Source: Ophelia neglecta (Eukaryota). Taken from it: a stretch of 64,000 nucleotides of DNA. Location of the stretch: positions 61,628,001 through 61,692,000 of the forward strand of contig OZ260665.1 in the NCBI GenBank assembly GCA_965285935.1, in the 5' to 3' direction. Shown here in pieces: positions 15,001-47,713 of the stretch (position 1 is its first letter; every line of letters starts with the position of its first letter). The notes beneath the pieces are model-generated. The model made no database searches and was not told where the DNA came from. It saw only the letters and a list, made by a program, of their open reading frames with translations. The translations under genes and the position numbers were made by a program.

Positions 15001-16692
15001 GCCTCTGATTGGTATGATGTGTGTGGTGTCACAGGAAATTGATTCCTCCCACAATAACCTTGATGAGAGTGCTTCATCCTCACAGATTTTGCCTGCTTCC
15101 TGCCCCTGTCTCTATTTGTGTCTTCGGGGATGCTTTCCTGGTAGCCACTGGCATTGGCTGCCCTCTTATTGGCTGAGGGGGAGGGGGAAGGGGGGAGGGG
15201 GTGCAGGATACATAGCCGCTCCACTACAGAGGAAATGGTGATTTTCAAGAGGCAGGCACCTTTTTGGTAATGCATTAATGTATGATGAATTCATAATTTT
15301 CCAGCCAAATCCTCTGAAGCATAGATACTATGGATATTCACTCCAGGGAATTTATTCATTTGAAGAGGTATAAGTTTTCACATACATGGTCATTACCAAT
15401 TCACTTATACTGATAGTGTTCACAAAGAATACTATTTTGTATTATCAATATGCTGGTTACAATTCTGGTTTATATTCCTATAACTAGTCTCTACATGTAA
15501 GGTAAGAGTGAATAAAGTTTCACCAGGCAGTTCTGAGAGAAGACCCCCCCCCCCTTCTTTTCACCCATTACTTTTAGCCATATCAATACTTTCCCTCTAC
15601 CACTCTGCCTCCCATGATTAAATGATGGCAAGTTTATGCATTTATATCCTTCCTTGATTCAATAAAGATGACAGGCGTGGGAGTTAAAATGGATTTAACC
15701 TTTTGCTAACCAGGTTTTCCTTCATTTCAGAATTACTCGGAGATGGAGTTGGGTATTTTAAAGTTAGCTGCTGTCTTTATCATCGGTGAGTTGTTAATCT
15801 CCAGATGCAGATCTAAAGAGGGATTGGCTTGTAGGGTGCGGGAAGGGGCCTCTGTAGACAGGACTGAGGGTTAAGCCACTTAGACCTCAGACCGTGCTCT
15901 TAACACCTTCATCTCACATGGAGATACTCTTTGGAGCAATGTGCATGTCCAAAGTTAACAATGGGACAGGTTTAGACCACCCCCTCCCTATTAATCACCT
16001 TGAAGGGGGTCAGACCAACCCCTCCCCCTTAATCACGTGGAAGGGGTTCAGACCCCCCCCCCCCCCATCCTCCCCTTTATCACCTGGAAGGGGTTTAGAC
16101 CGCCCCCCTCCCCTTTATTACCTGGAAGGGGGTCAGACCACCGCTCTCCCCTAAGTCAACTAGAATAATGGTCAGACCACCTCTTTCCCCTAAATCACCA
16201 GGATGGGGGGCCTCCCACAAACACTCCCTCCATTCCAAACAAACCGGTGATTTTAATAGGAAATGTTATTCAAGTTTTAATAATATCTATAGCAGTATGA
16301 AGGAAGGTATTCACAAGTAAAGAAAGGTATTGCTTCAAAGTATATGGCATAAGTTTCTCACTTGAAGGATGTATCAAAGATAAAAGAAAATAATAAGACA
16401 TGAACTTATATGATAAATATTATATAATATCTTCTAGAGTTTTCGCTTGTTTCTTTCAGCAAGTGCTGATGTAGGTTTTGCGATATGGGGTCGTTACAGT
16501 ACAAATGAGCCGAGCCCACCAGTTGGTTATGTAGCCCACCTAATGGGGGCGCTGGCAGGGCTTACTATCGGACTATTGGTGCTTAAAAACTTTGAACAGA
16601 AATTGCACTCCCAGGTGATGTGGTGGGTGGCCCTTGGGGTCTACTCTGCCTGTACCCTCTTCGCTGTGCTGTGGAATATATTTTTCTACTAA
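1..16692 (+). CDS. RHBDL: Rhomboid-family intramembrane serine protease (RHBDL2/RHBDL3/Drosophila rhomboid-like); 5' end lies outside the window. Exons: <1-159, 8037-8179, 11552-11664, 12510-12610, 15731-15785, 16460-16692
   Basis: All introns are GT-AG and phase-consistent (804 nt, 267 aa plus stop in window). The spliced protein has YTCCPPP, the WR motif ([14 protein letters not shown]), [14 protein letters not shown], catalytic Ser in GASGG and catalytic His in AHLMG. Confidence 0.95.
2527..3178. repeat. 32-bp palindromic minisatellite, about 20 copies, in the first rhomboid intron in the window
   Basis: Unit GTCACTGGGT(A/G)CCAGTCAGCTGACTG(G/A)TGTAA repeated head to tail, without spacers. 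Confidence 0.95.
8200..8424. mobile_element. Degenerate Tc1/mariner-type MITE remnant
   Basis: Ends CACTGTTAACC...GGCTTACAGTG are roughly inverted, with internal TTCGCGAAA(T)T-type subrepeats. Confidence 0.35.
15970..16210. repeat. C-rich degenerate tandem repeat, about 40-bp unit, about 6 copies
   Basis: Recurring GGAAGGGG(G)TCAGACC(A)CCCCTCCCCTTTAATCACCT. Confidence 0.8.
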
Positions 16693-19963: not shown

Positions 19964-22900
19964 TCACAAACGTGTTGTTAAAGTTTCCTTGAGAATGCGT
20001 CCACATTGCCATTTCGTTCTCTTGTTGTCACGCCTTATTCGTGATTGCTCGGAAATGAGCAACAGGCCGGATCCTAGAACCATACACCCTCCTGTGCCAT
20101 ATAAAGCATAGCTCCATGATCCAGTAAGCTCTGAGCTGTATGCTATTATGATGAAATAAATTAAGTTAAGAGATTTAATGAACAAGTTCACAAGTTTTAT
20201 CCCCGGCGCAATACATAAGTGTCACAGGAAGAAAGTAATCTAAAAAGACCCCCACCATCATGCTTAAGAGAGAGGCATTTGAGAGAGAGTTAAGATGGTA
20301 CCAACCGCATAATGGTTGTGCATAGAGCGAAGGCACACCCATGAAGAATGCCATCCATCCTACTGCTGCGTTGTACAAAGATTGCTCCATTATATCTGTC
20401 AATATGATAGGGGGCACGGTTAAACAGACGCTGGAAAAGAATCCAATCCATGTGGATAAGAACATCAATGCCGTAAAGTTCTTCCCGACTGAAGGTGTTA
20501 TGGCAGCACCTAAAGAAGCAGCACAGCATATTAAGAAGAACAATGTGCTTTTCTGGAATATGTTTCTGTCGACCAGCGCCCCCATAAACGAGCGGCCACA
20601 TATGCCTCCAACTGAAACCATTGTGGCAAGTAACGATGACTCCATAATATCAAGTCCAACGTTTTCTCCATGAGCAGGAAGTAGGAAGAACAAAAGTGGA
20701 AAAAATGCAGACATTGTGAATAGGAGAGAAACATTGAAAAGTAAAAACCCTCTTGTGCTAAAAATTCTCCTTAATTGACCAAATCTCCCATTTTCCCGTG
20801 CATTGGTCTGCACTAAAGAAAGTTTCGCTGTTCCTGTGTCGTATTTCCTTACACTAATCACTGACACCTCAATGCGTTGTACCTTTTTTATCGGCAACTG
20901 GTCTTCTTCATTATATTTAAGGATCGTTTGTGAACGTTTATAAACATCATCAGCCGTCGGAGGTTGAATGAGCTCATTGTTGCCTGATGTACACTCTCCA
21001 GCAGTATGCTTCCTTGTATAAAATGACGGTGGTCTTAATAGGGACGCAAAGACCAGTATATTCAGCATGATGCCAGACCAGATTAGGAAAGTTCCTTTCA
21101 GGCTGTACATTCCAAGAAGGAACGTGAACAGAGGTGCTCCAAAGAGACCTCCAATGCCAGACCCAACAAAGATTACCCCTAAAGCTAGACCTCTGTGTTT
21201 TTTGAAGTAGGTGTTCACAAGAGCGACTGGCGTAAAAAGCATAATAGCATCACCTAGACCTATAAAACAAAAAACACCTGCGGACTCATTTATCCTCTTA
21301 TATTACGGTTGATTGTAATAATAGAAATGGTAAAAAGGATCGTCTGGGTAGCCAAGAGTACGACAAAACTTTCAAATTTTGCATAGGCGTTTTGTCATTA
21401 GTACATATTTCGATAGGCATAATTGAAAAAAAACTTTCTTTGGGATTTGTTTGTTTTACAATGACGATTTAGATTAAAGTCGAAGAGCTACACACGTGTC
21501 GACTATAACTTTGGTGCATACGCTACTCACCTATCATCAAGCCAAGAGTTAAATACAGATATTCCAACTTTGGCAAAAAACTTGTGATTAGATTTGCGAG
21601 AAATACTAATATTCCAGAGACGAAGCACAGCGTCCTTAAAGTACAAATGTTTGTTAAACCTCCTACGACTGGAGCTGAAACGACACGTAGAAAGAATATA
21701 CGCGGACAATATATCCACTTAATATATTGCACTTTAAAGTGATGCAAGCATCTGAAGACACATTTTTTGATTGCCAATAGTTATATCTCCTAAATTGGAA
21801 GGTTAAATAACTTAAGTCTTGTTAATGGTTGCATTTTATTATTTTCTGATTTGGTTAGGCTAAGGCAAAAATAAATCAAACTTAGGTCGATTGATTTTTC
21901 CGCTTGCTTGTGCAGCTTCAAACGTTTCTTATGTTAGTTTTCAATTTTAACATATTTTTTTCATAATTCGTCGACCTGAGACAAGTAATATTTTTATGGA
22001 TAATTTTCTAGCCATCATGATATATTAAAAACTTGAATGTCTTAATGTGATATGATGGCATAAAACCTGCAGCTCGCGTTAGCAATTCTGTAAAACAAAA
22101 CCCGTCGACCACTTATCCATTTGGACAAATTTTCCACATTTTGTCGAGAGGATGGTTTGAGCAGTTTTGTGGCTCGAGAGGTTTCCAGCGAGGGACGACT
22201 GTATTACAGATATAAAAATTGTCTTCCTACGTACCTAACATGAATCCTACAGCTTGAACCAAAGCTCCAACCCACGCTATTGATGTCGGCTTAGATCCAT
22301 AATTTTCCATCAAGGCAAGATATTGCACTCCAAATATTGTCTGATTCATCCCCGCTAGAAACACTTCCTTCATACATAAAGCTAAATAGCGAAAAAATAT
22401 GTCCAGTTTAATCTGTGAGGTATTGCACATGTTCATGAATATTATCCACTTAATATATAGCCCCGTTGAAGGGGTATTCGGCAGGGCTATTCGGTAGAGC
22501 TATTGCAGAACATATATTGCATTTTCATCACTGAATATCATTGTGGCCATTTCAGATTTATGCAAATGATTGGGAGGAGGCTTCTCGTGACATGAAGAAA
22601 ATCTCACGTAATAACAGTATAGTTTGAATATCAAAAATGAGCTTTAAAATAAAATACTAGATAGCAATGCGAAAGCCACAGTGAAACTAGAAATAAGGCT
22701 TATGTACTTCAGACATGAAATGTCTATCCAAAGCTCCTGGACCAGACTTTTGAGAAATACTATTGCATTTAATACATACCAAAGAGAATCACCCAGGCCC
22801 ATCCTCTGTCCACAGGGATAGTGTGCACATCTTTCTTTTGTTTTGTCCCAGTAGAATTTGTTGAAATCGGCAAACAAATAGCCGTATTCGAATCAAATTT

Positions 22901-22990
22901 ATTATCTGTCTTAGTGGATTTGCCCTCATCAAAGCATTCAAACGCAGAATTTGTAGCTCCAGATAGGCCAAACTTACTTTTCTCTCCCAT
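19964..22990 (-). CDS. SLC16: MFS transporter, SLC16/monocarboxylate transporter family, 544 aa. Exons (minus): 22990-22780, 22381-22235, 21674-21531, 21259-20306, 20142-19964
   Basis: GT-AG, phase-1 junctions throughout, 1635 nt in frame. Motifs: PVDRGWAWVILFA (SLC16 TM1 PDGGWGW-like), YFKKHRGLALG, LLRPP, a long central loop, GRSFMGALVD and ELTGSWSYALY. Confidence 0.92.
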
Positions 22991-23429: not shown

Positions 23430-24345
23430 ATTTACTGATAAAATAAATGAATTTAGAGATATGACGAACAAGTCAGAAGTGTTATCAACGCCACACATCA
23501 GTCCTACAAGAAGAAAGTAATCCACATAGACCCTTACCATAGTGCTAAAGAAACCGGCTTAAAGTTTGAGACAATTGAGATAGTACCAACATCACTGTGG
23601 TTGTTCATACAGCGAGGCCCCCCCCCCCCCCCCCTGAAAAGTCCGATCCATTCTTTTGCTGCATTGTACAAAGGTTTCTGCAATATATTCGTCAATATGA
23701 TAGGGGTGGCTGGGTTAAGCATACGCTTGAAAAGCATCCTATCCACGTTGATAAGAACATCAATGCCGGAAAGTTCTTCCCGACTGAAGGTGTTATGGCA
23801 GCAGGTAATTTAAGTAGCGGCACAGCATGTTGAAGATAACAATGTTCTTTTCTGGAATATGTTTCTGTCGACCAGCGCCCCCAGGAGCGGGTGACCCAAC
23901 ATGCCTCCAACTGAAACCATGGTGGCAAGTAAAAATGATTCCAAAATATCGAGTCGAATGTTTCCATGAAGAGGAAGTAAGAAAGCCATGAGAGGAATAT
24001 AGCCAGACATTGTGATGAAGACAGAAATATTGAAGATTAATCAGTCACTTGTGCTGAAAATTCTCCCTAATTGACCAAATCTCCCATTTTCCCGTGCACT
24101 GGTCTGCCCTCCAGAAAGAGAAGCTATTCCTAGGTAGTCCTTCTTTTTCCTTTTTACTAACACCTCAATTCATTGTACACGTTCCGGCAATTGGACCGAA
24201 GCTCTATTCTCAATGTTGTTCTGATCTTTTTAAAAAATATATTCGGGGATCGTTGAAGGACGCTTTGAAACATCCTTGGCCGTTGGCGACTGATTGAGAC
24301 CATTCTTGTTTGATGTGAATATTTCAGAAGCGTGTTTCCTTGCAG
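23430..24345 (-). pseudogene. Degraded partial duplicate of the SLC16 gene (3' part of exon 4 plus the following intron)
   Basis: Colinear similarity to about 20140-21020, for example TTCTGGAATATGTTTCTGTCGACCAGCGCCCC and GTTCTTCCCGACTGAAGGTGTTATGGCAGCA. Frameshifts split it over ORFs 23810-24010, 23692-23967 and 23534-23746, and it carries a poly-C expansion. Confidence 0.9.
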
Positions 24346-25155: not shown

Positions 25156-26639
25156 TGCCTATTTATACATAATAATGACTGACAAATACCTAAAAACGTG
25201 TACTTTTAAATAGTATATACACGCATTGTAAACTACCTTAATTATTACTTATGGGCTTACCTTAGCTACGAAGGTGAATAACCCATGAAGTATGATTAAA
25301 TGGCTTCAGGCTTCTACACGTCACATGAGAAATGGGCATATTAAAAGATTAACCATACCACGTTAAAGTTATTATGAACAAATATGTGTTATATTTTGTG
25401 TACCGATATAATTCCCTCTTAGCGAGCAATCAATGATCCGTGTACAAATAAATCTGGTACAGGTATTATTTTATTAAGTAATCTCCAATCTTGACAATAC
25501 ACGATCCGTCATTATGCAAAAGGATATGGGTTGTGGTTATACATAAGTGTTATATGTATATTGTGCGGGATAACGACCAAATAAACAAGAGTATGTATAC
25601 TCTTATTTATTCTACCATCGATGTAGCGGGCAGATTTCACAAGGTTTACGAGCCAAATTGAACTCTTTCGAGATAAGAAGACAGTCAAGTCCGTTTTAAG
25701 AACCGTTCACTTGACACGGATTTTTGGTCGATAATTACGTTACACATTAAAGTCCGGTAAGTAGATATATACATTTATCTCTTGGGAAACCCCGGTTTCA
25801 AGCATTTCATTTTGCTTATATGTCATATCATCTCATTGTAAATAAAGCATACAGGCCTAGGTGGTAAGAGCTTGCATTGAGGAGGGTAAACGCCCAACCG
25901 ATTAAGAAACAACTGAGTTCCTAACTTTATATATTTCCCCAAGTTTCTAATGACTTCCGGAAATTCTTAATTCTCAGTCCGTCAAATCTACATGTATATT
26001 AAAAAATAATTCCAACTTGAGATAGGCATTAAAAGTAGAATAATGATACTCCACCCACATGATCGTAATGGCATAACGAAGCCTAAAACTGCTTGCATTT
26101 ACACTGTGGGAGCGATAAACCTACTTTCTGAGTAGGGACACGAGAGTAGGAAGGGACAGAGAACCAAGTAATTTCGATGGGAGTTCCCTTCAAAGCGGAC
26201 TTTGCTTGTCACCACATTAACACACATAGACTTTTGGCGCTCTTATTTGTATCGAGCCATAGGTGACTTTTTTTTCCCAATAAATCAACATATAAAGAAA
26301 ACTGTTCAGGCATTTGCACAGACGATTGACTGCGCTCTACCGAAGAATATTTCTGATGTGCTAAAGTAAATGTCTTTAGGGGTGGTACAAAATCTATCGT
26401 ATACCTTTGTAAATTAATTACATCACTGGTTAAGTGTTACTAAACAACTGGTTTATAAGTAGCTAAGTCGATGAAAAATTGTCAATATATGCTAGCTGCT
26501 TTTCTAATTACTTTCATGATCATAAATTATTCTTAAATCAGTTAAAAGATCCCATGTTTGACACAGTTATAACACGAGTTTCGTCATGAACTTACAGGTC
26601 GATATATGTGGGTGAAAGTCTACAAAAATATAGGTGAAG

Positions 26640-27079
26640 ATGGGCTGTGGTGGGAGCACCGCTACTACAACTACCACCTCCGTCGACAATCACGCATCTA
26701 AGCCTATTATAAACAAGTCCGAAAACGGAAAAGGGCAGGAAGCTGATAAACAAACCGCAGATGACCATGATCTTATACCTCAAACAACAAAGAATAAAAC
26801 GAACAATGGCCAAGAAGAGAATACTGTAATGGAAAACAGGGAGGTGAGCACAGGTAGCCGATTTTGACATACATGTTAACAAATGTAATACAAAAAGCAT
26901 TAAAATAGCCAAATTATAGGACCCATTTTGATCTGTTTTTTTCATAATCACAGGAGACTGAAAATATGGAAACATTAGAAGAAATAGCGAAAGTTTCAGT
27001 GGATGACATTCTTGCGGGAGCTATGAACAACCTGAAAAAACTGCCATCGGCGGAGCACAATGAAGAGCGAAATCATTAA
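26640..27079 (+). CDS. 109-aa putative lipid-anchored small AKAP-like protein. Exons 26640-26843 and 26954-27079
   Basis: AAGATGG start, N-terminal MGCGGS, donor GAG|GTGAGC, acceptor TTTTTTTCATAATCACAG|, phase-0 join. Exon 2 encodes ETENMETLEEIAKVSVDDILAGAMNNLKKLPSAEHNEERNH*. Confidence 0.72.
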
Positions 27080-28429
27080 CCATTTACGAGAGCGTGGCTT
27101 GGGACCGAAGCACTGCTAAATTCCCTTTCGAATGTTTACAGTTTATCCCGATTGATTACAGAACAACTGTACGCTCTCATGGACAAGTTATCCTCCATAA
27201 TCATTTGGCATTATGATAAGTGTAATGTCCAGGTCTGTATATGGTCATACGTACAACGAAGGAAGGCGACTTACCAACGACAACCCAACATGTCTACAAG
27301 TTCATCTAGACAAGCTATTAGAGGACCTCGTGTTTAAAACACCGCTTGAAACGCGTACGACCGCATTCTTCCGATCTTTCTTTACAAAGTTAATTCAAAC
27401 TTGCCATGCTGTTTTTTATAACTTGCAATTCGGAAGTGTTCGTAGGCAATATCCGTTAGAATTATATTGAAGGTTTGAGTCCTATGACCATTGAAGCTTC
27501 ACACGGTGTTTTTTGAAATTTTAACATAATTCACGGGGGTTCGTCTATTTGCCGCGCCTTTCCTTATCGGTGTATTACAAAGCCCACAAGGATTATTACG
27601 GCGAGATAATACGGATTAATCTCTATACAGTGACACAGAGGACATATACAGTCGGTGTGTTTATGAGACGGTCAATCTTCACCTTGATTAGACAATGATG
27701 TGTCTCAGTGAATAAACTCGCCCTTCGAGTTGTTTTTCTACTTATTTATTGTTGGAGCTACCTCCTTAATCCGATCTCGAGGATGTGCATGCGGCTGTCA
27801 AACTACAACCATCTATATAACTTATATTTGTGATGTTTTACCGTGTGATTTTAAATACAAATTGCTTCATAACAAATAGAAGTGGACGAGTCTACCTTAT
27901 TAATTAAGGTGTTTACTAATAGATCTTTTAGCCTACATGATAGATTTGAGTTGCTGTTTTATTAAATGTAGATTTGAGTTAAGTATAATAATCAGTTTTT
28001 TTATACTCCGTAATTCCGTAATCTCTACCTGAGATTAGCTTATATTTAAGTAAAGACCATTCATTTATCCTGATTAGTCTTGTAACACAAACTACAATCA
28101 GATTGTTTTAATTAAATGTTTATAAATGTAGGGGAATCTGAGTTCTTGATCCGAATCGCTTTCCTACTAGAAACAAATTGATCTGAAAATATGTCAGGAA
28201 CCGTCTGTAATGATGGTACAGAAAGTTTCGGTTGTCGGTCCCTTTAACAAAACTCTACCGAAGATTTATTTTATTTAACACCTGGAATAAGCTTTTTCTA
28301 ATTCGAAAAAAACTAGATTTTGCACCCAAACAGATGGTTTTTGTTACACAATGTATATAAATGCAGAACCCAGAGAAAACATTATATAAAATCAACGTGA
28401 CGGTTGATTGGTACTTATCCAGAGTAGGG

Positions 28430-30420
28430 CCCCACCAAGCAAAAAAACGTTTTTTAAATGTCTTAAAAATGTTTTTTTTTCAAAACATATAAACGTTTGA
28501 TAAAACCTAGATAAAAATATTATTAAACATTAATTTGTTGGTTCTTATTAACATTAATTTACCGTTTTTTAGAAACATTTTCAACATGCGTTTTTATAAT
28601 GTTTTTCCTCAAACGTCTTTTCAACGTTATTTTGTTGAGTTTTTAAACATATTTTAAACGTTTTTAAATAACATTTTAACAAACGTTTTCCTCAAACGTG
28701 TTTCCAACGTTCTTTTGTTGGTTATTTTTAACATATTTTTAACGTTTAAAAAAAACATTCACAGTATTATTCCTTAAATGCGTTCTTTTTAACATAGTTT
28801 TAACATTTTCACAAAAACATTCTTAACAAACGTTTTTATAATGATTTGTCTCAAAAGTGTTTCCAACATTATTATGTTGGCTTTTTTTAACATATGTTAA
28901 CGTTTTTAAAAACATTCACAATATTATTTCTTAAATGCGTTTTCAAGATTTCTTTCTTCTTTTAAACATTTAAATAATATAGATACAACATTTTTCAACT
29001 ATTAACAAAGTTAATTTAATGGGGCAACACTGCCATAAATGATAAAAGCTTTACTTTTACACAAATTCATCAAGCATGCCATAGCTTTCTAGCTTCCTAG
29101 CAATACTTTGTAGCTTTCTTTAACATACTTTTTATGGCATAAAGGTTTACAAAACTTTTTACGTTGCACATCTCAGGTGATATAACACATCTAAAATCAA
29201 TCTAAATTGAACTTTAAACAAATGGCAATATACTTTATTTGATCACATTATAGAACCCCTACTCCAACATGTGATATATAGTGGACATGTTATACCAAAA
29301 ATAGTATTTCATAAGTGAATAAACATAAAGTTCAAAATATGGTAGAAAGTTAAGCAAATAGTTGTGTTATTCTGCGCCATTATTTAGAACAAAGAAGCAT
29401 AGAAAAAAATCCTATGACAAAAACGTACATGTGTCAGAATCGTACATGCGCGCGCATGTGTCAGAATCGTACATGCGCGCGCATGTGTCAGAATCGTACA
29501 TGCGCGCGCATGTGTCAGAATCGTACATGCGCGCGCATGTGTCAGAATCGTACTTGCGCGCGCATGTGTCAGAATCGTTCATGCGCGCGCATGTGTCAGA
29601 ATCGTACATGCGCGCGCATGTCTCAGAAACGTACATGCGCACGCATGTGTCAGAAACGTACATGCGCGCGCATGTCTCAGAATCGTTCATGCGCGCGCAT
29701 GTCTCAAAACTGTTTATGCGCACGCATGTCTGAAAACTGTTTATGCGCACGCATGTCTGAAAACTGTTCATGCGCCCGTAGGTCATTTTGTGAGCCATGC
29801 GTGCCCAGACAAAAAATTGAGTAGCCTCGGAAGTGGTAGCCTTTCAGCATACTTAAGGGCATTCTCTTCAGCAGAATATTTGTCCTATACATAATTGGGG
29901 ACACCATTAAGTTCATGGTGTTGTAGTGATTCATAAAAAATGTGAACGTGCTTGACTCATGCTATTTAAGATTTTAAGAGGCAACATATTTCCTAGTCCA
30001 AGAATCATCTTTATATTTGTTATATTTTGATAATTTTTACAGTTGGAAATTCTGTATGTAGGTTGCTTTGTTACTTATTTGTTTATTTCATGAATAGTTT
30101 AGGCTTAGCACTACTATGGATATACATTTTTCAAACGTTTTTCATGACTATCTGTTTTATACTGCTTTAGTAACGTTAAAGTAGTAACCATGAATGAACG
30201 TTTGCCTTAAATGTTTGCGGTAACATAATTATCACATAATAAAAAATGCATTTCAAACGTTATTTAAAACTTTTTATTCCAAACGTTTTAAGAGAACTTT
30301 ACTTTTTAACATTTATTTAGAAAATTAAAAATATTTCTAAAACGTTTTGTCTAAACATTTCTCGTTAACCATTTCATTCCACTTTAAAACGTTTGATAAA
30401 ATGTTTAATGTTTGGTGGGG
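28430..30420. mobile_element. About 2-kb non-autonomous DNA transposon (CMC/EnSpm-like CCC termini) with AAACGTTT subterminal repeats and an internal minisatellite
   Basis: Left end CCCCACCAAGCAAAAAAACGTTTTTT is inverted relative to right end AAAATGTTTAATGTTTGGTGGGG. Both arms contain many AAACGTTT/AAACATTT motifs. No transposase ORF and no clean TSD. Confidence 0.65.
29424..29777. repeat. 27-bp CpG-rich palindromic minisatellite, about 13 copies
   Basis: Unit CATGTGTCAGAATCGTACATGCGCGCG. It generates the 9-aa-periodic ORFs in several frames. Confidence 0.95.
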
Positions 30421-38265: not shown

Positions 38266-41200
38266 ATGGGAGTAAACATGATGGACGTTCAAATAAAGGT
38301 AACATTTAATATGAATAGTAAATTTTAAATGGTAGATGCACCACAAACTTAAGTGTTAGGTCTGACTGCTATATATTTTACAACACGTTAATTTATCATC
38401 TTTTTTATTGAGAACATGTTGTAAATGCAGTACAGAGAAAACTACTATTTTCTTTGCCAACATATGAGGTACTGAAAGTTCTCTATCGGCGAGAGACCGA
38501 AAATGTCGCCATTATTTCTTTAACCGATTATAAATTAGTAAACAAAATAGCGATATCTTTAGAAATGTATATAACATGTATATAACCTAATTCATGCATC
38601 TGAAAGAAATAAACAAGTTATCTTTATACCTGTAGATAGACAAAACACCCAGCGACAGAAAAAACAAGGCATCGGACGGACTGGACCTAACCTACAGAAT
38701 AAATGAAGTGCCGCCGTGGCACCTTTGCATATTCCTTGGTTTTCAAGTAAGTTGACAATTTATGTCTCATGACAAAGGGAGAATAGAGTGCTTGTATTAC
38801 AAAATTATCATCAAATATGATGATGATATTTTGCCTCGCACAGAATTGAACTAGGGACACCCATAGCTCTTGTGAGATGTATATGCATACTGTTTTATAT
38901 AGGTAGTCGTAGCCTAGTGCGATGAATTTATCACCCACTCAAGTCTGTTTTTATATCCTTGTTATCATGTGTCAAAATAGCGTCCGATTTAAAGCAATTT
39001 TCTAAAGGCATGCAGTAGTGTAATGTTATCATACAATACGTTTCTTTAGTGACAGATTTCTAAATACTAGAGAGGATTAGTTCTTCTGATAAATAAGTTT
39101 AGAAAACTTGTGCTTTCAACCACGAGATGTCAAGTTGGGTGTATTCTTATGGTGTTCTATAGGAATAAGTGCTGTCCGTTTGGCAGCTTCTCCAGCTTAT
39201 AAGTAGATATAATAGGGACGGACCATAGTGGTTTCTAGTATGTTCCGGACCAATATGTCCAGACTGGTAACTAATTTAATAATACAGTGCAATCTAAATG
39301 TGAATTCTGGAGAAAGGTCCCGGCTTTTAGAACATTTGAAACAACGCATCAATTATTTAAGAAAGCAGGATGCCGTTGCCGTTGAGCTCCCACACATGTT
39401 ACCGGAAATAAATTTTTACCCGGCTTCGTGAAGTTTTCACCAAGTGTGCAGACAATATTTTGAATCGGGAAGCTTTGACGAGCGCAACAGCCACGTTCTG
39501 AGGGCTACACAATTTGAGACTTCACTCATCATAATCTTCAAGAACCTACTTATCATTTTAGACATTTGTATTCCGGATATTTGAAGCATTGCTTATCGAT
39601 TAAGTCAAAATTATACCGGACTTCTTTGGATATTACTGATTAAGCTTATATAATTATATAGTTTGGAACACGCCTTTGCGTGTTGGCCTTACTGAAACAT
39701 TGTATAGATAGATATAAATCAATTACATTCCTGAATACATAAACAAACCGTTTTATTGTGTTAGGGCCTTTTGAAAAAAAAAACGGGCAGAGGAAACGAA
39801 GCAAATTTATTACACATATTATTGATAGCCTGGATTGAAAGTTTTGTTGATTGCCCCGTGGCTATTTATTTTCATCATCCTGATTCCTATAAGTCAAACA
39901 TCATGTTCCAATATATTTAGTACCCTTTGCTCAGCTCTGATCGTATAAGTTATGTGCTCGTATTGGTTTATTATATTTTTTTGTATATACCATATAGATC
40001 AAGGATGATAAAATGGAATAGCCACGTGCTTCTACCTGTATCAAGTTTACTACCCTTTTCACCCTTTATCATTCCGTAAGGGGTAGTTAATACTGGGGTG
40101 ACTAGGCCATCAAGTTGACCTGACATAAACTTTATTATAACCACCTCGGAATGTTGAGGTCAGTCAGTCATCAAAGCGTAATGTTGGGGTAATAAATCTT
40201 TCTCGTTCGCCACGGCAGAAAGCTGCTTTCAGAAGCACTTTTAAATGCGATGGTAGTTGTAGGAAGTGCCGTGATAGTTAACGATAGTTCTCAGGCCTTT
40301 CTTCAGGAGATAGTCCAGACACAAATCCGTTACCTATTTACCTTGTACATGTCTACATATTGTGAGGCTGAGAATTATGGAAATTTTACAGAAAATCACA
40401 TTTTTCGATCTATTTCCGAGTTTATTATGGTAATAAAACTTATACTAGCCACCTCCACCCCCCGGGCACCATGCTTCAATGAATTTCCATCGCCACGCCG
40501 CGTGACAAAAGGGATTTTAGCTTCTGCGAAATTTTTTGAATATTTCTTGGTGGTTATGGGAAAGTCATTTTAAGCAGAGGAAGCAGTGATAAATAGAAAA
40601 AAAAATACATATCCCACCCCTCCCCACCCCCACCCCTCCCTCCATCCCTATCTCACGCTTAAACAGGTATGTTCCAAAGGCAACAACAGTGTGGTATTGA
40701 GGCTTTATGATCTGATTGACCCATTCAGAAATGTATAAAGTACTCAGGCTTCGCCTCAATTGTATACAGCCATTGCTTAAATAAACATATGCGATATGAA
40801 GCCATGGAAGTGAACGCAAAGGATCAAGTTTATACAGTTTTACATTAGTTTTACAAAATAATTAGACTGGGGGAATTTCCTACAAAGTATTAGTTCAATT
40901 TCTTGTTCAAGGCTTTAATTTAAAAAAAACACTCTTAGGAAACAAACATTACAATTTAATGTGGCAGGTTTCTTTCTTTTCAATAATATATGTTAGAATT
41001 CGTTTTAATCAAAGATAAAATGACAATAGCTAAATCCGTGTGGTTTGACAGTCTCCCTCCGGCGTTTACACTATAGAACCTCCGAAATTTCCTTTGGCCC
41101 TTAATTTACCCCAAAATAACCTCGTTAGAAATGCGCTGAGTACTTTAACATTGCCTGGCGGTGGACTGCGAAGAGGCTGCTGATAACAACAACCAATTAT

Positions 41201-44200
41201 ATAGTTTTGTATTATTAGATAATCGAAATATATCTGGTTGATCATGTTTATGAACATATGAATCTAGGTACACGTTACAATAACAAGATGAAATTATTAA
41301 ATTGATGGTGAATTTAACTTTAAATAGGTTAGTGAAATATGATCATGAAATTGTTTCTTTTCCCGGAAAAATCAAGAAGACTTCGCTCTTAAACATGGGC
41401 TATAGCTAGTATGATTGGGTAAACCCCAGTACCTTGGTAACATTTATATGTTTAATAGAATAACTGATCCAATGACAATCCCGTAAAAACATTATGTTGG
41501 ACCTTATGAAAATGGCTTCAATATATGAATTATTTTGTATAGGCCTATATGAAAATGGCATAATAGTAAAATATTTGATGAATTAAGCATGTTTATAGTG
41601 TGCTATGATTGTTGTGTTTACGTGAGTATAGTCACAATATATATATGGGCCTATCGAGGCCATACTTTTTGACCAAATCATGCTCATCCAACTTTTAGTT
41701 TATCTATCGAAATCATCGTTGTAGTCAAGATCTTTATCCAAGTTGATGGAAGTTCTTTCCTGAAAAATGTGTATTACAGCATTACATGACGATGCTTGCC
41801 TCTATCCTGTCGACATCTCTGATTGTGGGCAATGCCGTCTGCATGGGGCAGGACTATGTGGCTAAAAGCGAACTCCTCGGAACTCTTTTCTTCGTTTCTG
41901 GGATTGTTACTATCCTCCAATCCACTGTAGGAAGCAGGTATAAGTTTGATCTATGTTGAGTAAAGAATAATAACGAAAAAAACAATATTAGTTACTTGTA
42001 ACGTGCATTTGAAATGGTTTTACTTTCATTGTTTCATTGGTTAAAGAATATACGCTGCTTTGAAAAAACACAATATGTTTATTGGACACACATAGGTTAC
42101 CGATTATCCAAGGTGGTTCATTTGCCTTTTTGGTGCCGAGTCTTGCTATTATGAAGCTGAAGAAATGGGAATGCCCCAATATTGATCCTATCGGCGATGG
42201 AAACGGTAAATATTTAATACTTAAAGTACTCTTAATAAATGATTTTTCTGTACGTTTTATAATGGTTGGTCATCTAGCCCCTAATTTTGAGATCCAACAG
42301 GGCTATGAAATAAGTCACTCTGTATATAATATAGAACCAATCGGTTGGTTGCAGGTGGTTTGTTTACTCGCTAAATGTGGTTTATATACTGCATAAATGT
42401 GGTTTATATACTGCATAAATTTGGTTAGAAAAACAATGAACATGACATTTTAAACGCTCTCGTGGTAGTCAGAGAGCATTGCCAAAAGCTGCATATTCAG
42501 CGCAGCATACTAAATAGGTTCTAAAGTTTATATTACCAGTACAATTTAGCAATAAAAATGGGCGTTGTTTGGTGAAATATATATAATACCGGTCATACCC
42601 TCACGTCCTCGTCAACAGTGTGTCTAGGATGCCAGTTACACATGTGCATTTCTCCATACACCCCAAGGAATTTCGTGCAACACCGATGGCCCCACACAGC
42701 ATTCTACACGTCGCCGCAGCAGCTAGATTACAAACCGTGTATTTAATCCAGGAAAATTTTGGGGTACATAATAGATTGTCGTCTCTGAGGAAGCTTGATG
42801 GTGGATATCTGTTATATAGGGTCCAACGTAACCCTATAGAGCACTGTTTAGACTGAAAAAAAGGGGCATGGTCCTGACTCCTGACACCCTCTTTATCCCC
42901 CCCCCCATAAATCTGCGGGGTAGTTTGAACTTGAATCTGCTTTCGTACATTTCAGGTACACATCTATTGAGCTTAAATATGACGAATTCAGAAAATGTTA
43001 CCCTCACCCACACGGAAATATGGCAATTACGAATCAGGGAGGTCTGTAACGTTGCTTATTAATATTACGTAGTTGGGGTAGTGACCGGGTTAAGGAGCGT
43101 TAAAATATAGAACATTTTAATGCTAGATGACTGTATGTTTCTTGGTATTGCTTAAGAAATTATTGTCATAAATTAGAACGTCTGATGCTCACTTCACATC
43201 TTTAAAAAAAAAATAACCTATGAATGCATCTGAGCACAAACCCTGCTGAAATAATAACACACCTCGACTGTAGTCCTTTGTTCTCGATGTGTACCAACCC
43301 AATTGAGTTTGTTCAAACAAGTAGTTGAACGTAATCATTGTAGATACAGGGGGCGATAATTATCGCCTCACTAGCCCAGATTTTGATCGGATTGAGCGGT
43401 GTGGTTGGGCTGGTGATGAGATTTGTTGGGCCACTCTCTATAGGACCTACAATAACACTTGTTGGATTGTCATTGTTTTCTGTTGGAGGATCATACAGTT
43501 CTGGACAATGGGGAATTGCGGTTTTGTAAGTTTAATCAACTATAATAAATAATATGTTAAACAATTTACAAGAAATTGAAAAAAAAAAGATAATTGTTAT
43601 AATAGTAATATGCATTGTGAATGTGTTATAAGCAAAAAATATCTATTCAATTCCTTAGGGTACATTCAGGTTCATAGGCTGCTATAGAGATGCAGAAACA
43701 GGGAATCGCAAATCAGTACTTGCTTAGAACGCCGGAACATAATTATAGCACGCAGAGCCAAAATCATGTTTTGGGCGACTTATTTAAAATGAATCGTTCA
43801 CAAAGCTAACAAATAAACTATAATTACTAAAACTATAACTGAATTAACGTATGGCCATCTCTTTTCATCTTCAGGACAATAGCAATGATAACCCTCTTTT
43901 CACAATATTTGCGGAATTGCCACATCCCTTGTTGTAAAATCTCATGCAAAAAGGGCAACAGAGGGATTCATAAAACCAAATCCCCATTTTTCCAGTTGTT
44001 TCCGGTAAGTCTATATCCACTTTGATCTCGTCACAGCCGTATCTTATGATATGATATTTTAGACAGTTCGAGGCATTATATTTCTTGTATCGAAAGCGCC
44101 AACTTTTCTTTATTTGATTATTATTTATAGGCGTGCTTGCTACATCAAACCTGTCATTTTTGTTCTATATTCATAAATTGGATTCCTGAATAGGAAATGC

Positions 44201-47200
44201 TGTCTTCCTGCACACACATGGATACTATAGATTATAACTATATAACCATTCGCAGTCATACCTGCCAAAATATTTATAAGTCTGCCAGCCCAAACAAAGC
44301 TTGAATCAAAACATGTTAGTTTTACTAATCATTTCCTTATAAGGTTATCCTAGCCGTCTGCGTTTCCTGGCTTCTGTGTTTTGTGCTGACCATAACAAAC
44401 GTATGGCCGTCTGACCCGGAGGTCACGGGGTACAAAGCCAGAACCGACGTTAAGTTAGGAGCACTTTTAAACGCCAAATGGTTTAGATTCCCTTACCCAC
44501 GTAAGCCTATACTTATATCATAAAACCATATAACCCGATATATATATATTATGCCTGATAGGCATGTAGAATGTAGTTCTTAAGAGTTATGTAAATCTTA
44601 AGTGTAAAAAGGCACTAGGGAGCTACCATATGGGATTCCGGAATCTAGCCGAAGGGGGGAGGGACTATCTGGTTTGCATATCAAGAGGTATCGCGTCCTT
44701 AATTCCCTGAAAAAGTTCATGTTTAAACGTGTAATGAAACCCATAAATGCAAACACAACTGGGCTTAAATACAGGGTTCCTGCATTATCGTGACAGTTGT
44801 CAACTTACCTTCATCTGCACTCAGTGGACCAATTCACCATAAATCAAGGTTGAGTTTAAACTATTGTTTGGAACGTCGCCGATGGAATTTACCATGCGTG
44901 GCACTTTATTTCTACTCTATGATTAATTTAATTCGGACTCACTTGGTGATCTCCAGAGACACTTTCTACCTTCTCTACGATAAATTAAACTCGGATTCAC
45001 TAGGTCGATTTTCAAAACGAAATGGCTGCGATAGGTCGAGAGTTCACGGGAGTCATCGAATCAAGAAATTGAAATGCAAAAAAAATATTGAACCCATAAT
45101 ATGTAGTCATATACAAGAAACTAGATGATGATTTTATATTTGACCTTGACCTCTTTTCGCGGGACAAATTGAGAAAACCGATTTTCTAAAAAAAGGAATT
45201 CATTATTTTCTCAGATATTCAACGTCTGACCAATTTCCCCTTCATTTCTTCTTTGTTTATTTTCTTCGGAGTTTACAGAGACCCCAATTTTGTTCAAGAA
45301 TGTTTTTAATCCCCCCCCCCCCCCTCTCGATCAAAAATGTTCACTACCTTGCTCATAGTATATTTGCTTTCCGAAACATAACAAAAACTCTAGGTTCGAT
45401 TCAACAAATTATATCATTACCTGTTGGCCGCTCTTTGCTTGTCGATAAGGGCCTTTTATTTATAATGATTTTTGATAAAGAAAAGACCAACTTCTCAATC
45501 TAACCTAGTGCTCTGACGGCAAGCATGCGTTTAGGCCCGTACCTACATTACCTGACTTTGAAAGAATGTTCTAGACCCAGTGACGAGTATGTAAATATCT
45601 GCAATACCTGATTATTTTCAATTTAATTTTGTTTATACATATGAGCAGTACAGTGGGGCTTGCCGACGTTCAGTGTTGGGGCTGTGTTGGGAATGCTCGG
45701 AGGAGTTTTGGCCGGGATCGTGGAATCTATCGGGGATTACTACGCCTGCGCCCGTGTGGCCGGCGCTTCACCGCCTGTTAATCACGCCATCAATAGAGGT
45801 AACGAGCATTTCTGTTGATATTCATGGCGGGAGATATGCCTACGCATTTAATTCGTGTCATTCTCTTTTTTTATACCCATGTAGTCAAGTAGGCTTAATT
45901 TTAAATTTGTATGACAACTGTGTGGTTAAATTTGGTTTTAAAGTTCATAGTTCCTATGCAAACATTCCCTCTTCCGCAAAATGAATGAGGTCATTTCTGG
46001 GCCAATTAAATGGTTATTAAGGCCTTCACATCCGGAGGCAGCAACATGTTTGTCAACAAATTATAGACGCTTGAATGGCGTTAAACACATTCAAAAGCAC
46101 ATTATTTAGTAAATACATATATAACGAAATACCTTGCATGAATAAATGCATCCAGGTCTATACTAATGTCAATATATTTAAGGGTACATCCCGGCGTTTT
46201 TTTGTATCTCCTACCAAGGTATCTTCGTCGAAGGCATTGGGTGCATATTAGCTGGGCTTTGGGGGACCGGAAACGGTTCCACGTCATACACACAGAATAC
46301 CGGTACCATCGGCATCACAAAAGTAAGACGCATATTTCACATTTATGTCGATGTTTTTTTAGGTGTGTCTAAATATACTGAATAAAGTAAGTTAGTCAAA
46401 CTCATATTACTGCATTCAATTAGAAGATTTTACATTTAGATTATTTTCTGAAACAACAAGCATAATTGCTTTGTCATTAAAACCACAGACATTCTTTTGT
46501 AAACTTTGGACCGGCGTTTTGAAAGCATATTCATTGAATTCATGCAGTTGGTAAGGAATATCTTAACATCAGTGCCCTATATTCTCAGGTAGGAAGCAGA
46601 CGGGTAATTCAATATGCTGGAGGGATTTTACTAGTGTTTGGTGTACTCGGCAAAGTTGGAGCCTTCTTCGTTATTATACCTGACCCTGTCATAGGAGGGC
46701 TTTTTATAGGGCTGTTTGGTAAGGAGTCTTGAATTCTCCGCCTGGTTCGTCCATAGAAATAGTATTTGGTCCAGTTTAAATCATTATACAAATATGGGCT
46801 CAGAATGGCAGCAATAACACGGAAATTTTCATGGAAAGCCTTATTTAAACTTTTTAAATGCTTTAAATCTATATATCATTATTAGGTATGGTGACTGCAG
46901 TGGGAATATCCAATTTACAGTTTGTTGATATGAATTCAACAAGAAATCTGTTTATATTTGGGACCGCCTTGATACTGGGAATGGCGATTCCGGAATGGAT
47001 TAAATCCAATAACGATGCTATCAATTCAGGCTCGTTAAAACTTTCATACTTTAATGCGACCAAGACTCCGAAATCTAACATTTTGACCTTGTCAATCTTG
47101 TGACTTAAACAAACTGCGTTCGAGAAAACCCATACCATTTATAAGCGTATTCTTTTATATTTACCTCACCTCGTACCTTGTATGTTCGTTGCATTCGTAA

Positions 47201-47713
47201 ATAGTTTTATTTTTAATATCAACAGGTAATGAAACATTTGACCAGATAGTGATAATATTGTTAAATTCTCATATGTTAATCGGAGGGGTGGTCGGCTTTG
47301 TGCTGGACAACACAATCCCTGGTTAGACATTCTTACCTATCTAAATAGGTCTATACGTTTCTGTACATAACGTTTTATGTTGATTGTTTTACTCATTCGA
47401 TTTTAAGCCACTTTCAAAGACGTTTTAGTTGTTAGTTGGTACTGATAATCACTCTTTAGATCAAAAATCACACCCCTTATTGATTGGTCTGATACACCAC
47501 TTAGGTTCGGACACGGAAAGAGGCCTTACCAAGTGGAGAGGTCTAGCAGGTACCCTAGAACATCAGGAAAAAACCCATGATGATTCGACCTATGAATTTC
47601 CATGCGGGATGAAATATATTAGGAGATGTTCATGTTTTCGATTTGTGCCTCTATGCCCAACATTTCTTAGTAAACACGGGCGAGAAGGTAATGTAGTAAG
47701 CACTCGATTTTAG
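38266..47713 (+). CDS. SLC23: SLC23/NAT (NCS2) nucleobase-ascorbate transporter family member, 599 aa. Exons: 38266-38298 (tentative), 38636-38746, 41780-41937, 42096-42205, 42956-43041, 43344-43525, 43875-44004, 44344-44500, 45649-45798, 46219-46322, 46589-46718, 46886-47029, 47226-47321, 47505-47713
   Basis: 1800 nt in frame. Motifs: [13 protein letters not shown] (QH motif), [38 protein letters not shown] signature [27 protein letters not shown] and LDNTIPG. One intron requires a GC donor. Confidence 0.95.

What the first reader, a model, noticed from the sequence alone, without database searches (positions are those of the whole stretch)
26640..27079. Hidden 109-aa microprotein: dual-acylation N-terminus plus PKA-anchoring (AKAP-like) helix
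Seen in sequence: a 2-exon ORF, only partly shown in the ORF track, giving MGCGGSTATTT..., a polar disordered linker, then LEEIAKVSVDDILAGAMNNL. Established knowledge: Gly2/Cys3/Ser6 is the N-myristoylation plus palmitoylation pattern, and PKA R-subunit-binding helices (Ht31 LIEEAASRIVDAVIEQV, AKAP-IS IEYLAKQIVDNAIQQA) have paired hydrophobic residues every four positions. Here those pairs are I-A, S-V, I-L and A-M; the Ser is the one deviation. The layout of acyl anchor, linker and AKB helix is that of vertebrate smAKAP and AKAP7-alpha. Inference: an invertebrate membrane-tethered PKA scaffold, homologous or convergent, and easily missed by annotation. Candidate 5'-UTR donor at 25756|GTAAGT.
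Basis: partly seen in the sequence, partly recalled or inferred. Interest (0 to 1): 0.75.

Follow-up and report, generated by a model that had tools for sequence, protein, structure and literature searches.

The report
Possible small lipid-anchored protein gene
A short two-exon reading frame in an invertebrate genome probably encodes a small lipid-anchored membrane protein ending in a short helix, but nothing yet shows that it is expressed or that it anchors protein kinase A.

Summary
ATG 26640 opens a 68-codon exon (MGCGGST...), a canonical 110-nt GT-AG intron follows, and a 41-codon exon (26954-27079) carries LEEIAKVSVDDILAGAMNNL.

Several features argue for a real gene. These are start context, splice signals, branch point, a GC-poor intron, composition-based coding scores and a GC-richer block reaching AATAAA. 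Only 3 of 75 ORFs in the window allow an equally good spliced extension. MGCxx[ST] starts arise in about 1 of 300 random windows.

Nothing independent supports it. No RNA run exists. No homologue, paralogue or Pfam family was found.

The AKAP reading rests on motif only. The helix fits 7 of 8 published hydrophobic-face positions. It lacks the F/Y-A type-I determinant, its hydrophobic moment is ordinary, and AlphaFold2 breaks it at KVS. Similarity to the human smAKAP helix is at chance level, and the SmAKAP family has no match.

My reading is a probable orphan membrane-tethered microprotein, about 0.6. A convergent PKA anchor is about 0.18 and chance about 0.3. The scan had not noted this before. 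The spliced model was searched exon by exon only.

The parts
25757..26597 (+). Putative 5'-UTR intron (donor CCG|GTAAGT, acceptor TTACAG|G). This part is speculative.
   Evidence: Sequence read. The donor is consensus and the acceptor tract is weak. No RNA is available to test it.
26606..26608 (+). Out-of-frame upstream ATG in weak context. It opens a 31-aa ORF that overlaps the main start.
   Evidence: ORF 26606..26701. Base 26606 is A>C in one contig of the same sample, so the upstream ATG is polymorphic (table 3).
26631..26633 (+). In-frame TAG three codons upstream of the start codon
   Evidence: the ORF list begins at GTG 26634.
26640..26660 (+). Start codon and MGCGGST, an N-myristoylation (Gly2, Ser6) plus palmitoylation (Cys3) type motif
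   Evidence: It is the only such start among 75 ORFs. MGCxx[ST] is expected 0.0033 times per simulated window. The acylation rules are recalled knowledge, not tested here.
26640..26843 (+). Coding exon 1: 68 codons giving a polar, low-complexity linker that ends in phase 0
   Evidence: Codon log-likelihood is 0.103 bits per codon, the best of six frames and in the top 1.1% of 89 random stop-free stretches. GC is 0.441.
26844..26953 (+). 110-nt GT-AG intron with a TTTTGAT branch-like site (26926-26932) and a T7 tract
   Evidence: GC is 0.318, and five of its six frames carry stops (1-4 each). The sixth, an antisense frame, is open and belongs to the 127-aa antisense ORF. Donor matches 7 of 9 consensus positions and the acceptor has 12 of 17 pyrimidines.
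26954..27079 (+). Coding exon 2: 41 codons plus TAA
   Evidence: Codon log-likelihood is 0.251 bits per codon, the best of six frames and in the top 0.2% of 426 random stretches. It ranks 5th in the window-wide scan.
26984..27037 (+). IAKVSVDDILAGAMNNLK, the 18-residue amphipathic stretch in AKAP register
   Evidence: 7 of 8 hydrophobic-face positions and 7 of 7 polar positions fit. AlphaFold2 gives helices at residues 2-12 and 16-29 of the exon-2 peptide with a break at 13-15. The hydrophobic moment is ordinary.
27080..27716 (+). Putative 3' UTR ending at AATAAA (27711-27716)
   Evidence: GC is 0.407 here against 0.319 beyond. The GC profile falls to 0.265 in the 27800-27999 window.

Best explanation
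This is most likely a real, single-copy, lineage-restricted two-exon gene for a 109-aa protein.

Proposed mechanism:
- The initiator Met is removed and Gly2 is N-myristoylated during translation.
- Cys3 is then S-palmitoylated, so the protein sits on the cytosolic face of a membrane.
- About 70 polar, acidic, Thr/Asn-rich residues form a flexible tether.
- The C-terminal amphipathic helix (about residues 78-98 of the model) is the only structured element. It serves as a docking peptide that brings a soluble partner to that membrane.
- The best specific guess for the partner is a four-helix docking-and-dimerisation (D/D) domain of the RIIa type, meaning a PKA regulatory subunit or another RIIa-domain protein. 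I put that at roughly one chance in three if the gene is real.
- The Ser inside the hydrophobic face (KVSVDD) could act as a phospho-switch.

Shown: the reading frame, the splice and start signals, the composition and the helix pattern.

Inferred: transcription, translation, both acylations, membrane location and every binding partner.
For: Signals and composition:
- The start has A at -3 and G at +4 with an in-frame stop upstream. The donor is canonical, a branch-like site and T-tract are present, and the acceptor is CAG.
- Intron GC is 0.318 against 0.441 and 0.405 in the exons.
- A 1.2-kb GC-richer, A-skewed block runs from 26600 to about 27800 and ends near AATAAA at 27711.

Coding scores:
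- A codon model trained on 6652 kinase codons of this genome scores both exons highest in the proposed frame. Exon 1 scores 0.103 and exon 2 scores 0.251 bits per codon.
- These values fall inside the range of real exons, and 1.1% of 89 and 0.2% of 426 random stop-free stretches reach them.

Chance estimates:
- Only 3 of 75 ATG ORFs of at least 60 aa have an equally good spliced in-frame extension of at least 40 codons.
- The MGC..S start is unique among the 75 ORFs. It arose once in 300 simulated windows.

Other points:
- The locus is single copy, so it is not a repeat.
- The antisense 127-aa ORF has no Pfam match.
- The protein-language-model neighbours of exon 1 are small disordered proteins, 'CHD9 neighbor protein' at 0.83 and DUF4612 at 0.77. 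These are leads only.
- Five RIIa-domain exons exist in the genome, so candidate partners are present.
- No variant lies between 26607 and 27504 although 10 variant places lie in the 3601 bases laid. By my own arithmetic p is about 0.04-0.08, and the test is post hoc.
Against: - No RNA run holds the locus. The three holders are DNA contigs of one sample and show no joints.
- No homologue was found anywhere, no paralogue, and no Pfam family above threshold.
- The synonymous-codon score is uninformative: -0.001 and -0.004, between the real and random means.
- The codon score mostly reflects amino-acid composition. It ranks the antisense of a true MFS exon and a 27-nt tandem repeat above the candidate, and it scores the true MFS exon at -0.03.
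- An out-of-frame upstream ATG lies 34 nt before the start.
- The helix statistics are weak or post hoc.
Confidence: 0.6

Rival explanations
1. Chance ORF: intergenic DNA that happens to contain an open frame with good-looking signals. No mRNA or protein is made.
For: - There is no transcript and no homologue.
- The window holds 75 ATG ORFs of at least 60 aa and 19 ORFs of at least 110 aa.
- Three other 18-residue windows in the six-frame translation pass the same helix criterion by chance (4 of 42627).
- Synonymous codon use gives no signal.
- MGCxx[ST] at 0.0033 per window means a few such starts across the roughly 750 windows read in this genome.
- The thing was selected by eye from a very large scan.
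Against: The joint occurrence of the following is unlikely by chance. My own multiplication of the and rates gives roughly 1e-4 per window before any helix criterion.
- an acylation-type start
- a strong start context
- a canonical short intron with an AT-rich interior
- an in-frame second exon with a high composition score
- a GC block ending at a poly(A) signal

Confidence: 0.3
2. One reading: a true A-kinase anchoring protein. The helix binds the D/D dimer of PKA RI or RII and places the kinase at the membrane. It would be analogous to smAKAP or AKAP7-alpha but would have arisen independently. This is a sub-case of the best explanation.
For: - The helix IAKVSVDDILAGAMNNLK puts A, V, I, L, A, M and L at 7 of the 8 hydrophobic-face positions (2, 5, 6, 9, 10, 13, 14, 17) given in PMC12083921 section 5. 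All 7 solvent-face positions tested are polar or small.
- The four-residue periodicity (moment at 90 degrees, 0.40-0.45) is stronger than the plain helical one (0.18-0.28) in those windows, as expected for paired hydrophobics.
- Human smAKAP also has a Ser in its helix, and S66D abolishes RI binding (PMC12203939 figure legend).
- RIIa-domain exons exist in the genome.
- The layout of acyl anchor, linker and single helix equals that of smAKAP (plasma-membrane localisation and A-kinase-binding (AKB) helix: bioRxiv 10.1101/2023.12.10.570836).
Against: - Position 1 is Ile, not the F/Y reported as 97.7% conserved in type-I helices. In smAKAP, YA-to-LL abolishes RI binding without conferring RII binding (PMC12083921).
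- Position 5 is Ser and a Gly sits mid-helix.
- AlphaFold2 breaks the helix at K13-S15.
- There is no Pfam AKAP-family hit and no SmAKAP match in the genome.
- Alignment to the human AKB helix scores 19, a value reached by 2236 of 20000 shuffles. Eight of the 1565 stop-free segments of the window score 30-33.
- The hydrophobic moment is reached by 1579 of 20000 shuffles.
- Motif-only AKAP predictions are known (recalled) to give many false positives.
Confidence: 0.18
3. Exon 1 is the first coding exon of the SLC23-type (nucleobase/ascorbate) transporter gene downstream. It would splice 11.8 kb onward to the exon at 38636. The helix exon would then be an alternative terminal exon or a chance frame.
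For: - The first recognisable transporter exon (38636-38746) starts in phase 0 directly after a TAG acceptor and has no Met.
- Exon 1 also ends in phase 0.
- Among 21 ATG-to-donor phase-0 segments between 23000 and 38600, it has by far the highest composition score (6.9 bits) and a full start context.
- Transporter identity is confirmed by PF00860 at E = 5.7e-8 and 3.6e-7.
Against: - A strong acceptor lies only 110 nt after the donor and opens a well-scoring frame.
- A nearer candidate first exon exists at 38266-38298, 337 nt upstream, with a full start context.
- Phase agreement alone has a one-in-three chance.
- Exon 1 was never compared with long proteins, because of the length window.
Confidence: 0.08

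Closest known systems
smAKAP (C2orf88), the vertebrate small membrane A-kinase anchoring protein
   Same: It is about 100 aa, starts with an MGC-type acylated N-terminus (recalled), has a linker, and ends in one C-terminal R-subunit-binding helix. It localises to the plasma membrane. A Ser lies within the helix, and the helices share a short DIL..A core.
   Different: - There is no detectable homology. The Pfam SmAKAP family has no match and alignment to the human helix is at chance level.
- The candidate has I-A where smAKAP needs Y-A for RI binding.
- smAKAP is reported to arise at the base of vertebrates (PMC12083921 sections 4-5 and passages).
AKAP7-alpha / AKAP18-alpha (short lipid-anchored AKAP isoform)
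   Same: The layout is the same, from recalled knowledge: an N-terminal myristoyl and palmitoyl anchor followed by a single RII-binding helix in a protein of about 80 aa.
   Different: No Pfam family of any kind matched exon 2 at E <= 10. I made no sequence comparison because I held no tool-given AKAP7 sequence.
Small MGC-start disordered proteins of unknown function (OCC1/C12orf75 family PF15506; DUF4612/C1orf21 PF15389; 'CHD9 neighbor protein')
   Same: These are short, polar, disordered proteins. Exon 1 residues 1-27 align to OCC1 profile positions 1-27. The language-model neighbours of exon 1 are the CHD9-neighbour cluster (0.83) and a DUF4612 cluster (0.77).
   Different: - The OCC1 match is 12.4 bits, E = 0.18, against a cut-off of 27.
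- The genome-wide OCC1 search did not pick this locus.
- Atlas scores under 0.9 are leads only.
- None of these families is known (recalled) to carry an R-binding helix.

Membership tests
AKAP (functional class) | A 14-18 residue amphipathic helix with hydrophobic side chains at positions 2, 5, 6, 9, 10, 13, 14 and 17 (PMC12083921 section 5) | tested here: met
   IAKVSVDDILAGAMNNLK has 7 of 8 positions hydrophobic or Ala, with Ser at position 5. All 7 solvent positions are polar or small. The cut-offs were set after seeing it. 4 of 42627 six-frame windows and 82 of 20000 shuffles pass.
AKAP (functional class) | The helix is continuous and stable enough to dock | tested here: inconclusive
   AlphaFold2 on the single sequence gives mean pLDDT 82.5, with helices at 2-12 and 16-29 and a break at 13-15 inside the proposed helix. 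Single-sequence models of 41 residues are unreliable. The hydrophobic moment of 0.455 is reached by 1579 of 20000 shuffles.
AKAP (functional class) | Direct binding to the D/D domain of PKA RI or RII | not testable with these tools
   No multimer prediction or binding assay is available. Five RIIa-domain exons are present in the genome.
Type-I (RI-selective) AKAP | F or Y at helix position 1 and Ala at position 2 ('FA motif') | tested here: not met
   The candidate has I-A. The motif is described in PMC12083921 (abstract and section 5).
smAKAP family (Pfam PF15127) | Match to the family profile | tested here: not met
   Neither exon matched SmAKAP in Pfam-A at E <= 10. There is no match in the whole genome at E <= 10, but the control genomes are prokaryotes and rang nowhere.
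smAKAP family (Pfam PF15127) | Significant sequence similarity to the human AKB helix | tested here: not met
   The local score is 19, reached by 2236 of 20000 shuffles. With soft gaps the score is 24, reached by 491 of 20000.
OCC1 family (PF15506) | Profile match above the curated cut-off of 27 bits | tested here: not met
   12.4 bits, E = 0.18, N-terminal 27 residues only.
Dual-acylated (myristoyl + palmitoyl) proteins | Met-Gly start, small uncharged residue at 3, Ser/Thr at 6, Cys next to Gly2 | tested here: met
   MGCGGST fits the PROSITE-type pattern, which I recalled. The modification itself cannot be tested here.
Expressed protein-coding gene | A spliced transcript across 26843/26954 | not testable with these tools
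   No RNA run holds the locus.

The most novel reading that the evidence does not exclude
A lophotrochozoan invertebrate independently evolved a roughly 100-aa dual-acylated membrane anchor for PKA, or for another RIIa-domain protein. It would be a functional twin of vertebrate smAKAP/AKAP7-alpha with no sequence ancestry in common, encoded by an unannotated orphan two-exon gene, and possibly switched off by phosphorylation of the Ser inside its helix.
Probability: 0.18. Interest if true: 0.65.

Novelty: new member of a known kind. Interest (0 to 1): 0.4.

Why it matters
The recent evolutionary survey of AKAPs places smAKAP, and the main burst of AKAP origins, at the base of the vertebrates (PMC12083921). 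A small acylated PKA anchor in a mollusc- or annelid-type animal would show that this minimal design arises convergently. It would also give a compact tool for studying local cAMP signalling in invertebrate neurons.

More modestly, the locus shows how a plausible microprotein gene can be invisible to homology-based annotation. At present it is a well-formed prediction without expression or binding evidence. Its value lies mainly in being cheap to test.

Tried and rejected
**Homology to smAKAP: rejected.**
- No Pfam match.
- Alignment to the human A-kinase-binding helix is at chance level.

**OCC1 membership: rejected.**
- The match is 12.4 bits against a cut-off of 27.
- The genome-wide OCC1 search hit another place at E = 3.58. 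On inspection that place showed no gene-like frame.

**Repeat or transposon origin: rejected.** The locus is single copy.

**A minus-strand gene: rejected.** The 127-aa antisense ORF has no family. It is the hydrophobic mirror of a polar frame.

**Searches that found nothing:**
- PDB sequences
- the protein database with exon 1 and with exon 2
- 1.84 billion representatives with exon 2
- the ESM Atlas with exon 2
- JGI metagenomes with exon 1: 380 pattern matches, none related
- Foldseek against the PDB: 0 matches

These blanks are weak for three reasons.
- A 41-aa query can only find near-identical relatives in so large a library.
- saw only proteins of 37-119 aa, and only those of 23-72 aa.
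- Exon 1 was never compared with long proteins.

**Synteny route: failed.**
- The neighbouring MFS exon found no relative at E <= 1e-10 among 4368 candidates.
- That reference included the stop codon, which may have affected the search.
- The result suggests that close relatives of this animal are absent from the protein library.

**Literature:**
- The terms 'AVLISE' and 'THAHIT' gave only spurious hits.
- Searches listed no paper describing a small acylated AKAP in an invertebrate.
- PMC4980077 is not held.
- Supplementary Figures S1/S2 of PMC12083921 list AKAP orthologues by phylum. I could not see them, and they may bear on the novelty claim.

**Uninformative tests:** the synonymous-codon test and the hydrophobic moment.

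**Earlier scan notes:** one search found none on this subject.

Full report
**What is there**

- ATG 26640 has A at -3 and G at +4. It is preceded by an in-frame TAG at 26631.
- The ATG opens 68 codons, MGCGGSTATTTTTS...MENRE, ending at 26843 before GAG|GTGAGC.
- The next 110 bases have GC 0.318. They contain a TTTTGAT branch-like site 22 nt before the acceptor and a T7 tract, and they end in CACAG|G.
- From 26954, 41 further codons read ETENMETLEEIAKVSVDDILAGAMNNLKKLPSAEHNEERNH and stop at 27077-27079.
- The mechanical ORF list shows only the unspliced pieces 26634..26867 and 26966..27079. It also shows an out-of-frame upstream ORF from ATG 26606 and a 127-aa antisense ORF.
- AATAAA lies at 27711-27716.

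I left out every step that needs the joined protein.

**Context**

The locus is single copy in a 762-Mb genome. Earlier notes of this scan call the animal a lophotrochozoan without RNA data.

The locus lies in a 15.6-kb gap between two genes.
- On the minus strand is an MFS-type transporter gene. Its last exon is 20175-21242 (MFS_1, E = 3.3e-24) and its start lies near 22990. A short duplicated fragment sits at 23813-24010.
- On the plus strand is an SLC23-type permease gene. Its first recognisable exon is 38636-38746. Later exons match PF00860.

**Is it a gene? Evidence for**

- *Composition.* Exon GC is 0.441 and 0.405, against 0.318 in the intron and 0.32-0.36 in the flanks. A GC-richer, A-skewed block runs from 26600 to about 27800, with GC 0.265 in the 27800-27999 window just past the AATAAA.
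- *Codon model.* I built it from 6652 in-frame kinase codons of this genome, using 27 of 30 loci. Three loci were dropped for internal stops.
  - The proposed frame is the best of six for both exons, at 0.103 and 0.251 bits per codon.
  - Real exons average 0.145 with SD about 0.09.
  - 1.1% of 89 and 0.2% of 426 random stop-free stretches of equal length reach these values.
  - All six frames of the intron score negative.
- *Spliced extension.* Only 3 of 75 ATG ORFs of at least 60 aa, the candidate included, can be extended by an equally good donor and acceptor into 40 or more in-frame codons.
- *The start.* It is the only PROSITE-type myristoylation start among those 75 ORFs. In 300 simulated windows, MGCxx[ST] arose 0.0033 times per window.
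- *Variation.* No sequence variant lies between 26607 and 27504, although 10 variant places lie in the 3601 bases laid. One of them removes the upstream ATG.

**Is it a gene? Evidence against**

- No RNA run holds the locus. The three holders are DNA contigs of one sample, collinear with the genome and without joints.
- The synonymous-codon score is uninformative.
- The codon score mainly measures amino-acid composition. In a window-wide scan the two exons rank 5th and 17th. A 27-nt tandem repeat and the antisense of the real MFS exon rank higher, and the MFS exon itself scores slightly negative.
- No relative was found:
  - Pfam
  - PDB sequences
  - the protein database with either exon
  - 1.84 billion representatives with exon 2
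  - metagenomes with exon 1
  - the genome itself
- These blanks are weak. The queries are very short and the length windows narrow. Even the neighbouring 355-aa transporter exon found nothing at E <= 1e-10, so close relatives of this animal seem to be missing from the libraries.

I put a real gene at about 0.6-0.7.

**Is it an AKAP? In favour**

- PMC12083921 (abstract, sections 4 and 5, and passages) defines the anchoring helix as 14-18 residues with its hydrophobic face at positions 2, 5, 6, 9, 10, 13, 14 and 17.
- In the register IAKVSVDDILAGAMNNLK, 7 of those 8 positions are hydrophobic or Ala. All 7 solvent positions I tested are polar or small.
- The criterion was set after seeing the peptide. 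It is met by 4 of 42627 six-frame windows and by 82 of 20000 shuffles of the exon-2 peptide.
- The four-residue periodicity is stronger than the plain helical moment in those windows.
- Five RIIa-domain exons are present in the genome.

**Is it an AKAP? Against**

- The same paper reports F/Y-A at positions 1-2 as the type-I determinant. It also reports that YA-to-LL abolishes smAKAP binding to RI without giving RII binding. The candidate has I-A.
- The maximal hydrophobic moment of 0.455 is reached by 1579 of 20000 shuffles.
- AlphaFold2 on the single sequence (pLDDT 82.5) gives two helices, 2-12 and 16-29, with a break at K13-S15 inside the proposed helix. Foldseek found nothing.
- No Pfam family matches exon 2, and SmAKAP has no match in the genome.
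- The human smAKAP binding helix, as printed in bioRxiv 10.1101/2023.12.10.570836 (methods passage), aligns only over DIL..A.
  - The score is 19, reached by 2236 of 20000 shuffles.
  - With soft gaps the score is 24, reached by 491 of 20000.
  - Eight of the 1565 stop-free segments of the window score 30-33.

Homology is therefore rejected. Only convergence remains, at about 0.18 overall.

One parallel is worth noting. smAKAP has a Ser in its helix whose phosphomimetic S66D blocks anchoring (figure legend in PMC12203939). The candidate's only off-pattern residue is also a Ser, followed by acidic residues.

**Other readings**

- *Similar small proteins.* The N-terminus weakly resembles small MGC-start proteins. 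OCC1 scores E = 0.18 and 12.4 bits over residues 1-27. The Atlas neighbours are 'CHD9 neighbor protein' at 0.83 and DUF4612 at 0.77. All are below any threshold.
- *A structural rival.* Exon 1 ends in phase 0. The first transporter exon, at 38636, begins in phase 0 and has no Met, so exon 1 could be that gene's 5' coding exon. Against this, a strong acceptor lies 110 nt after the donor. A nearer small start exon also exists at 38266-38298. I give this rival 0.08.

**Verdict**

- This is best filed as a probable orphan gene for a small lipid-anchored protein with one docking helix. PKA anchoring is an attractive but untested possibility.
- Searches of the held literature listed no paper describing an invertebrate small acylated AKAP. 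I could not see supplementary figures S1/S2 of PMC12083921.

Noticed in passing
window 20175-22990 (minus strand) and 23534-24010 (minus strand): A four-exon MFS (monocarboxylate-transporter-like) gene starts near 22990. About 1 kb upstream of its start lies a short duplicated, probably dead, fragment of its last exon (MFS_1, E = 0.0014). It carries near-identical peptide stretches.
   Followed up: partly
window 38636-47710 (plus strand): An SLC23-type nucleobase/ascorbate permease gene with many exons (PF00860 at 43344-43526 and 45645-45815). Its first recognisable exon has no start codon. Candidate start exons are 38266-38298 or, 11.8 kb upstream, the finding's exon 1.
   Followed up: partly
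window 29428-29775: A tandem array of a 27-nt unit, about 11-13 copies at 93-94% matches. It is open in several frames on both strands and gives long repetitive pseudo-ORFs that score high in composition-based coding tests.
   Followed up: partly
window 28430-29000: An AT-rich interspersed repeat (GC about 0.22-0.25) with internal 83-nt repeats. In the DNA contigs of three runs its summed depth is about 50 to 200 times that of the flanks, so it is a high-copy element.
   Followed up: no
window 16447-16692 (plus strand): The probable last exon of a rhomboid-type protease gene (Rhomboid domain, E = 0.0037, below the cut-off). It ends in a stop codon.
   Followed up: partly
window 26606: An A/C polymorphism within the sample removes the out-of-frame upstream ATG that precedes the candidate start codon.
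   Followed up: no
G000 contigs C1 (about 136-140 Mb), C5 (about 111-116 Mb) and C9 (about 16-20 Mb): Large clusters of intronless kinase-domain ORFs of about 290-310 aa, with dozens of near-equal Pkinase hits. They indicate a lineage-specific tandem expansion of one kinase family.
   Followed up: no
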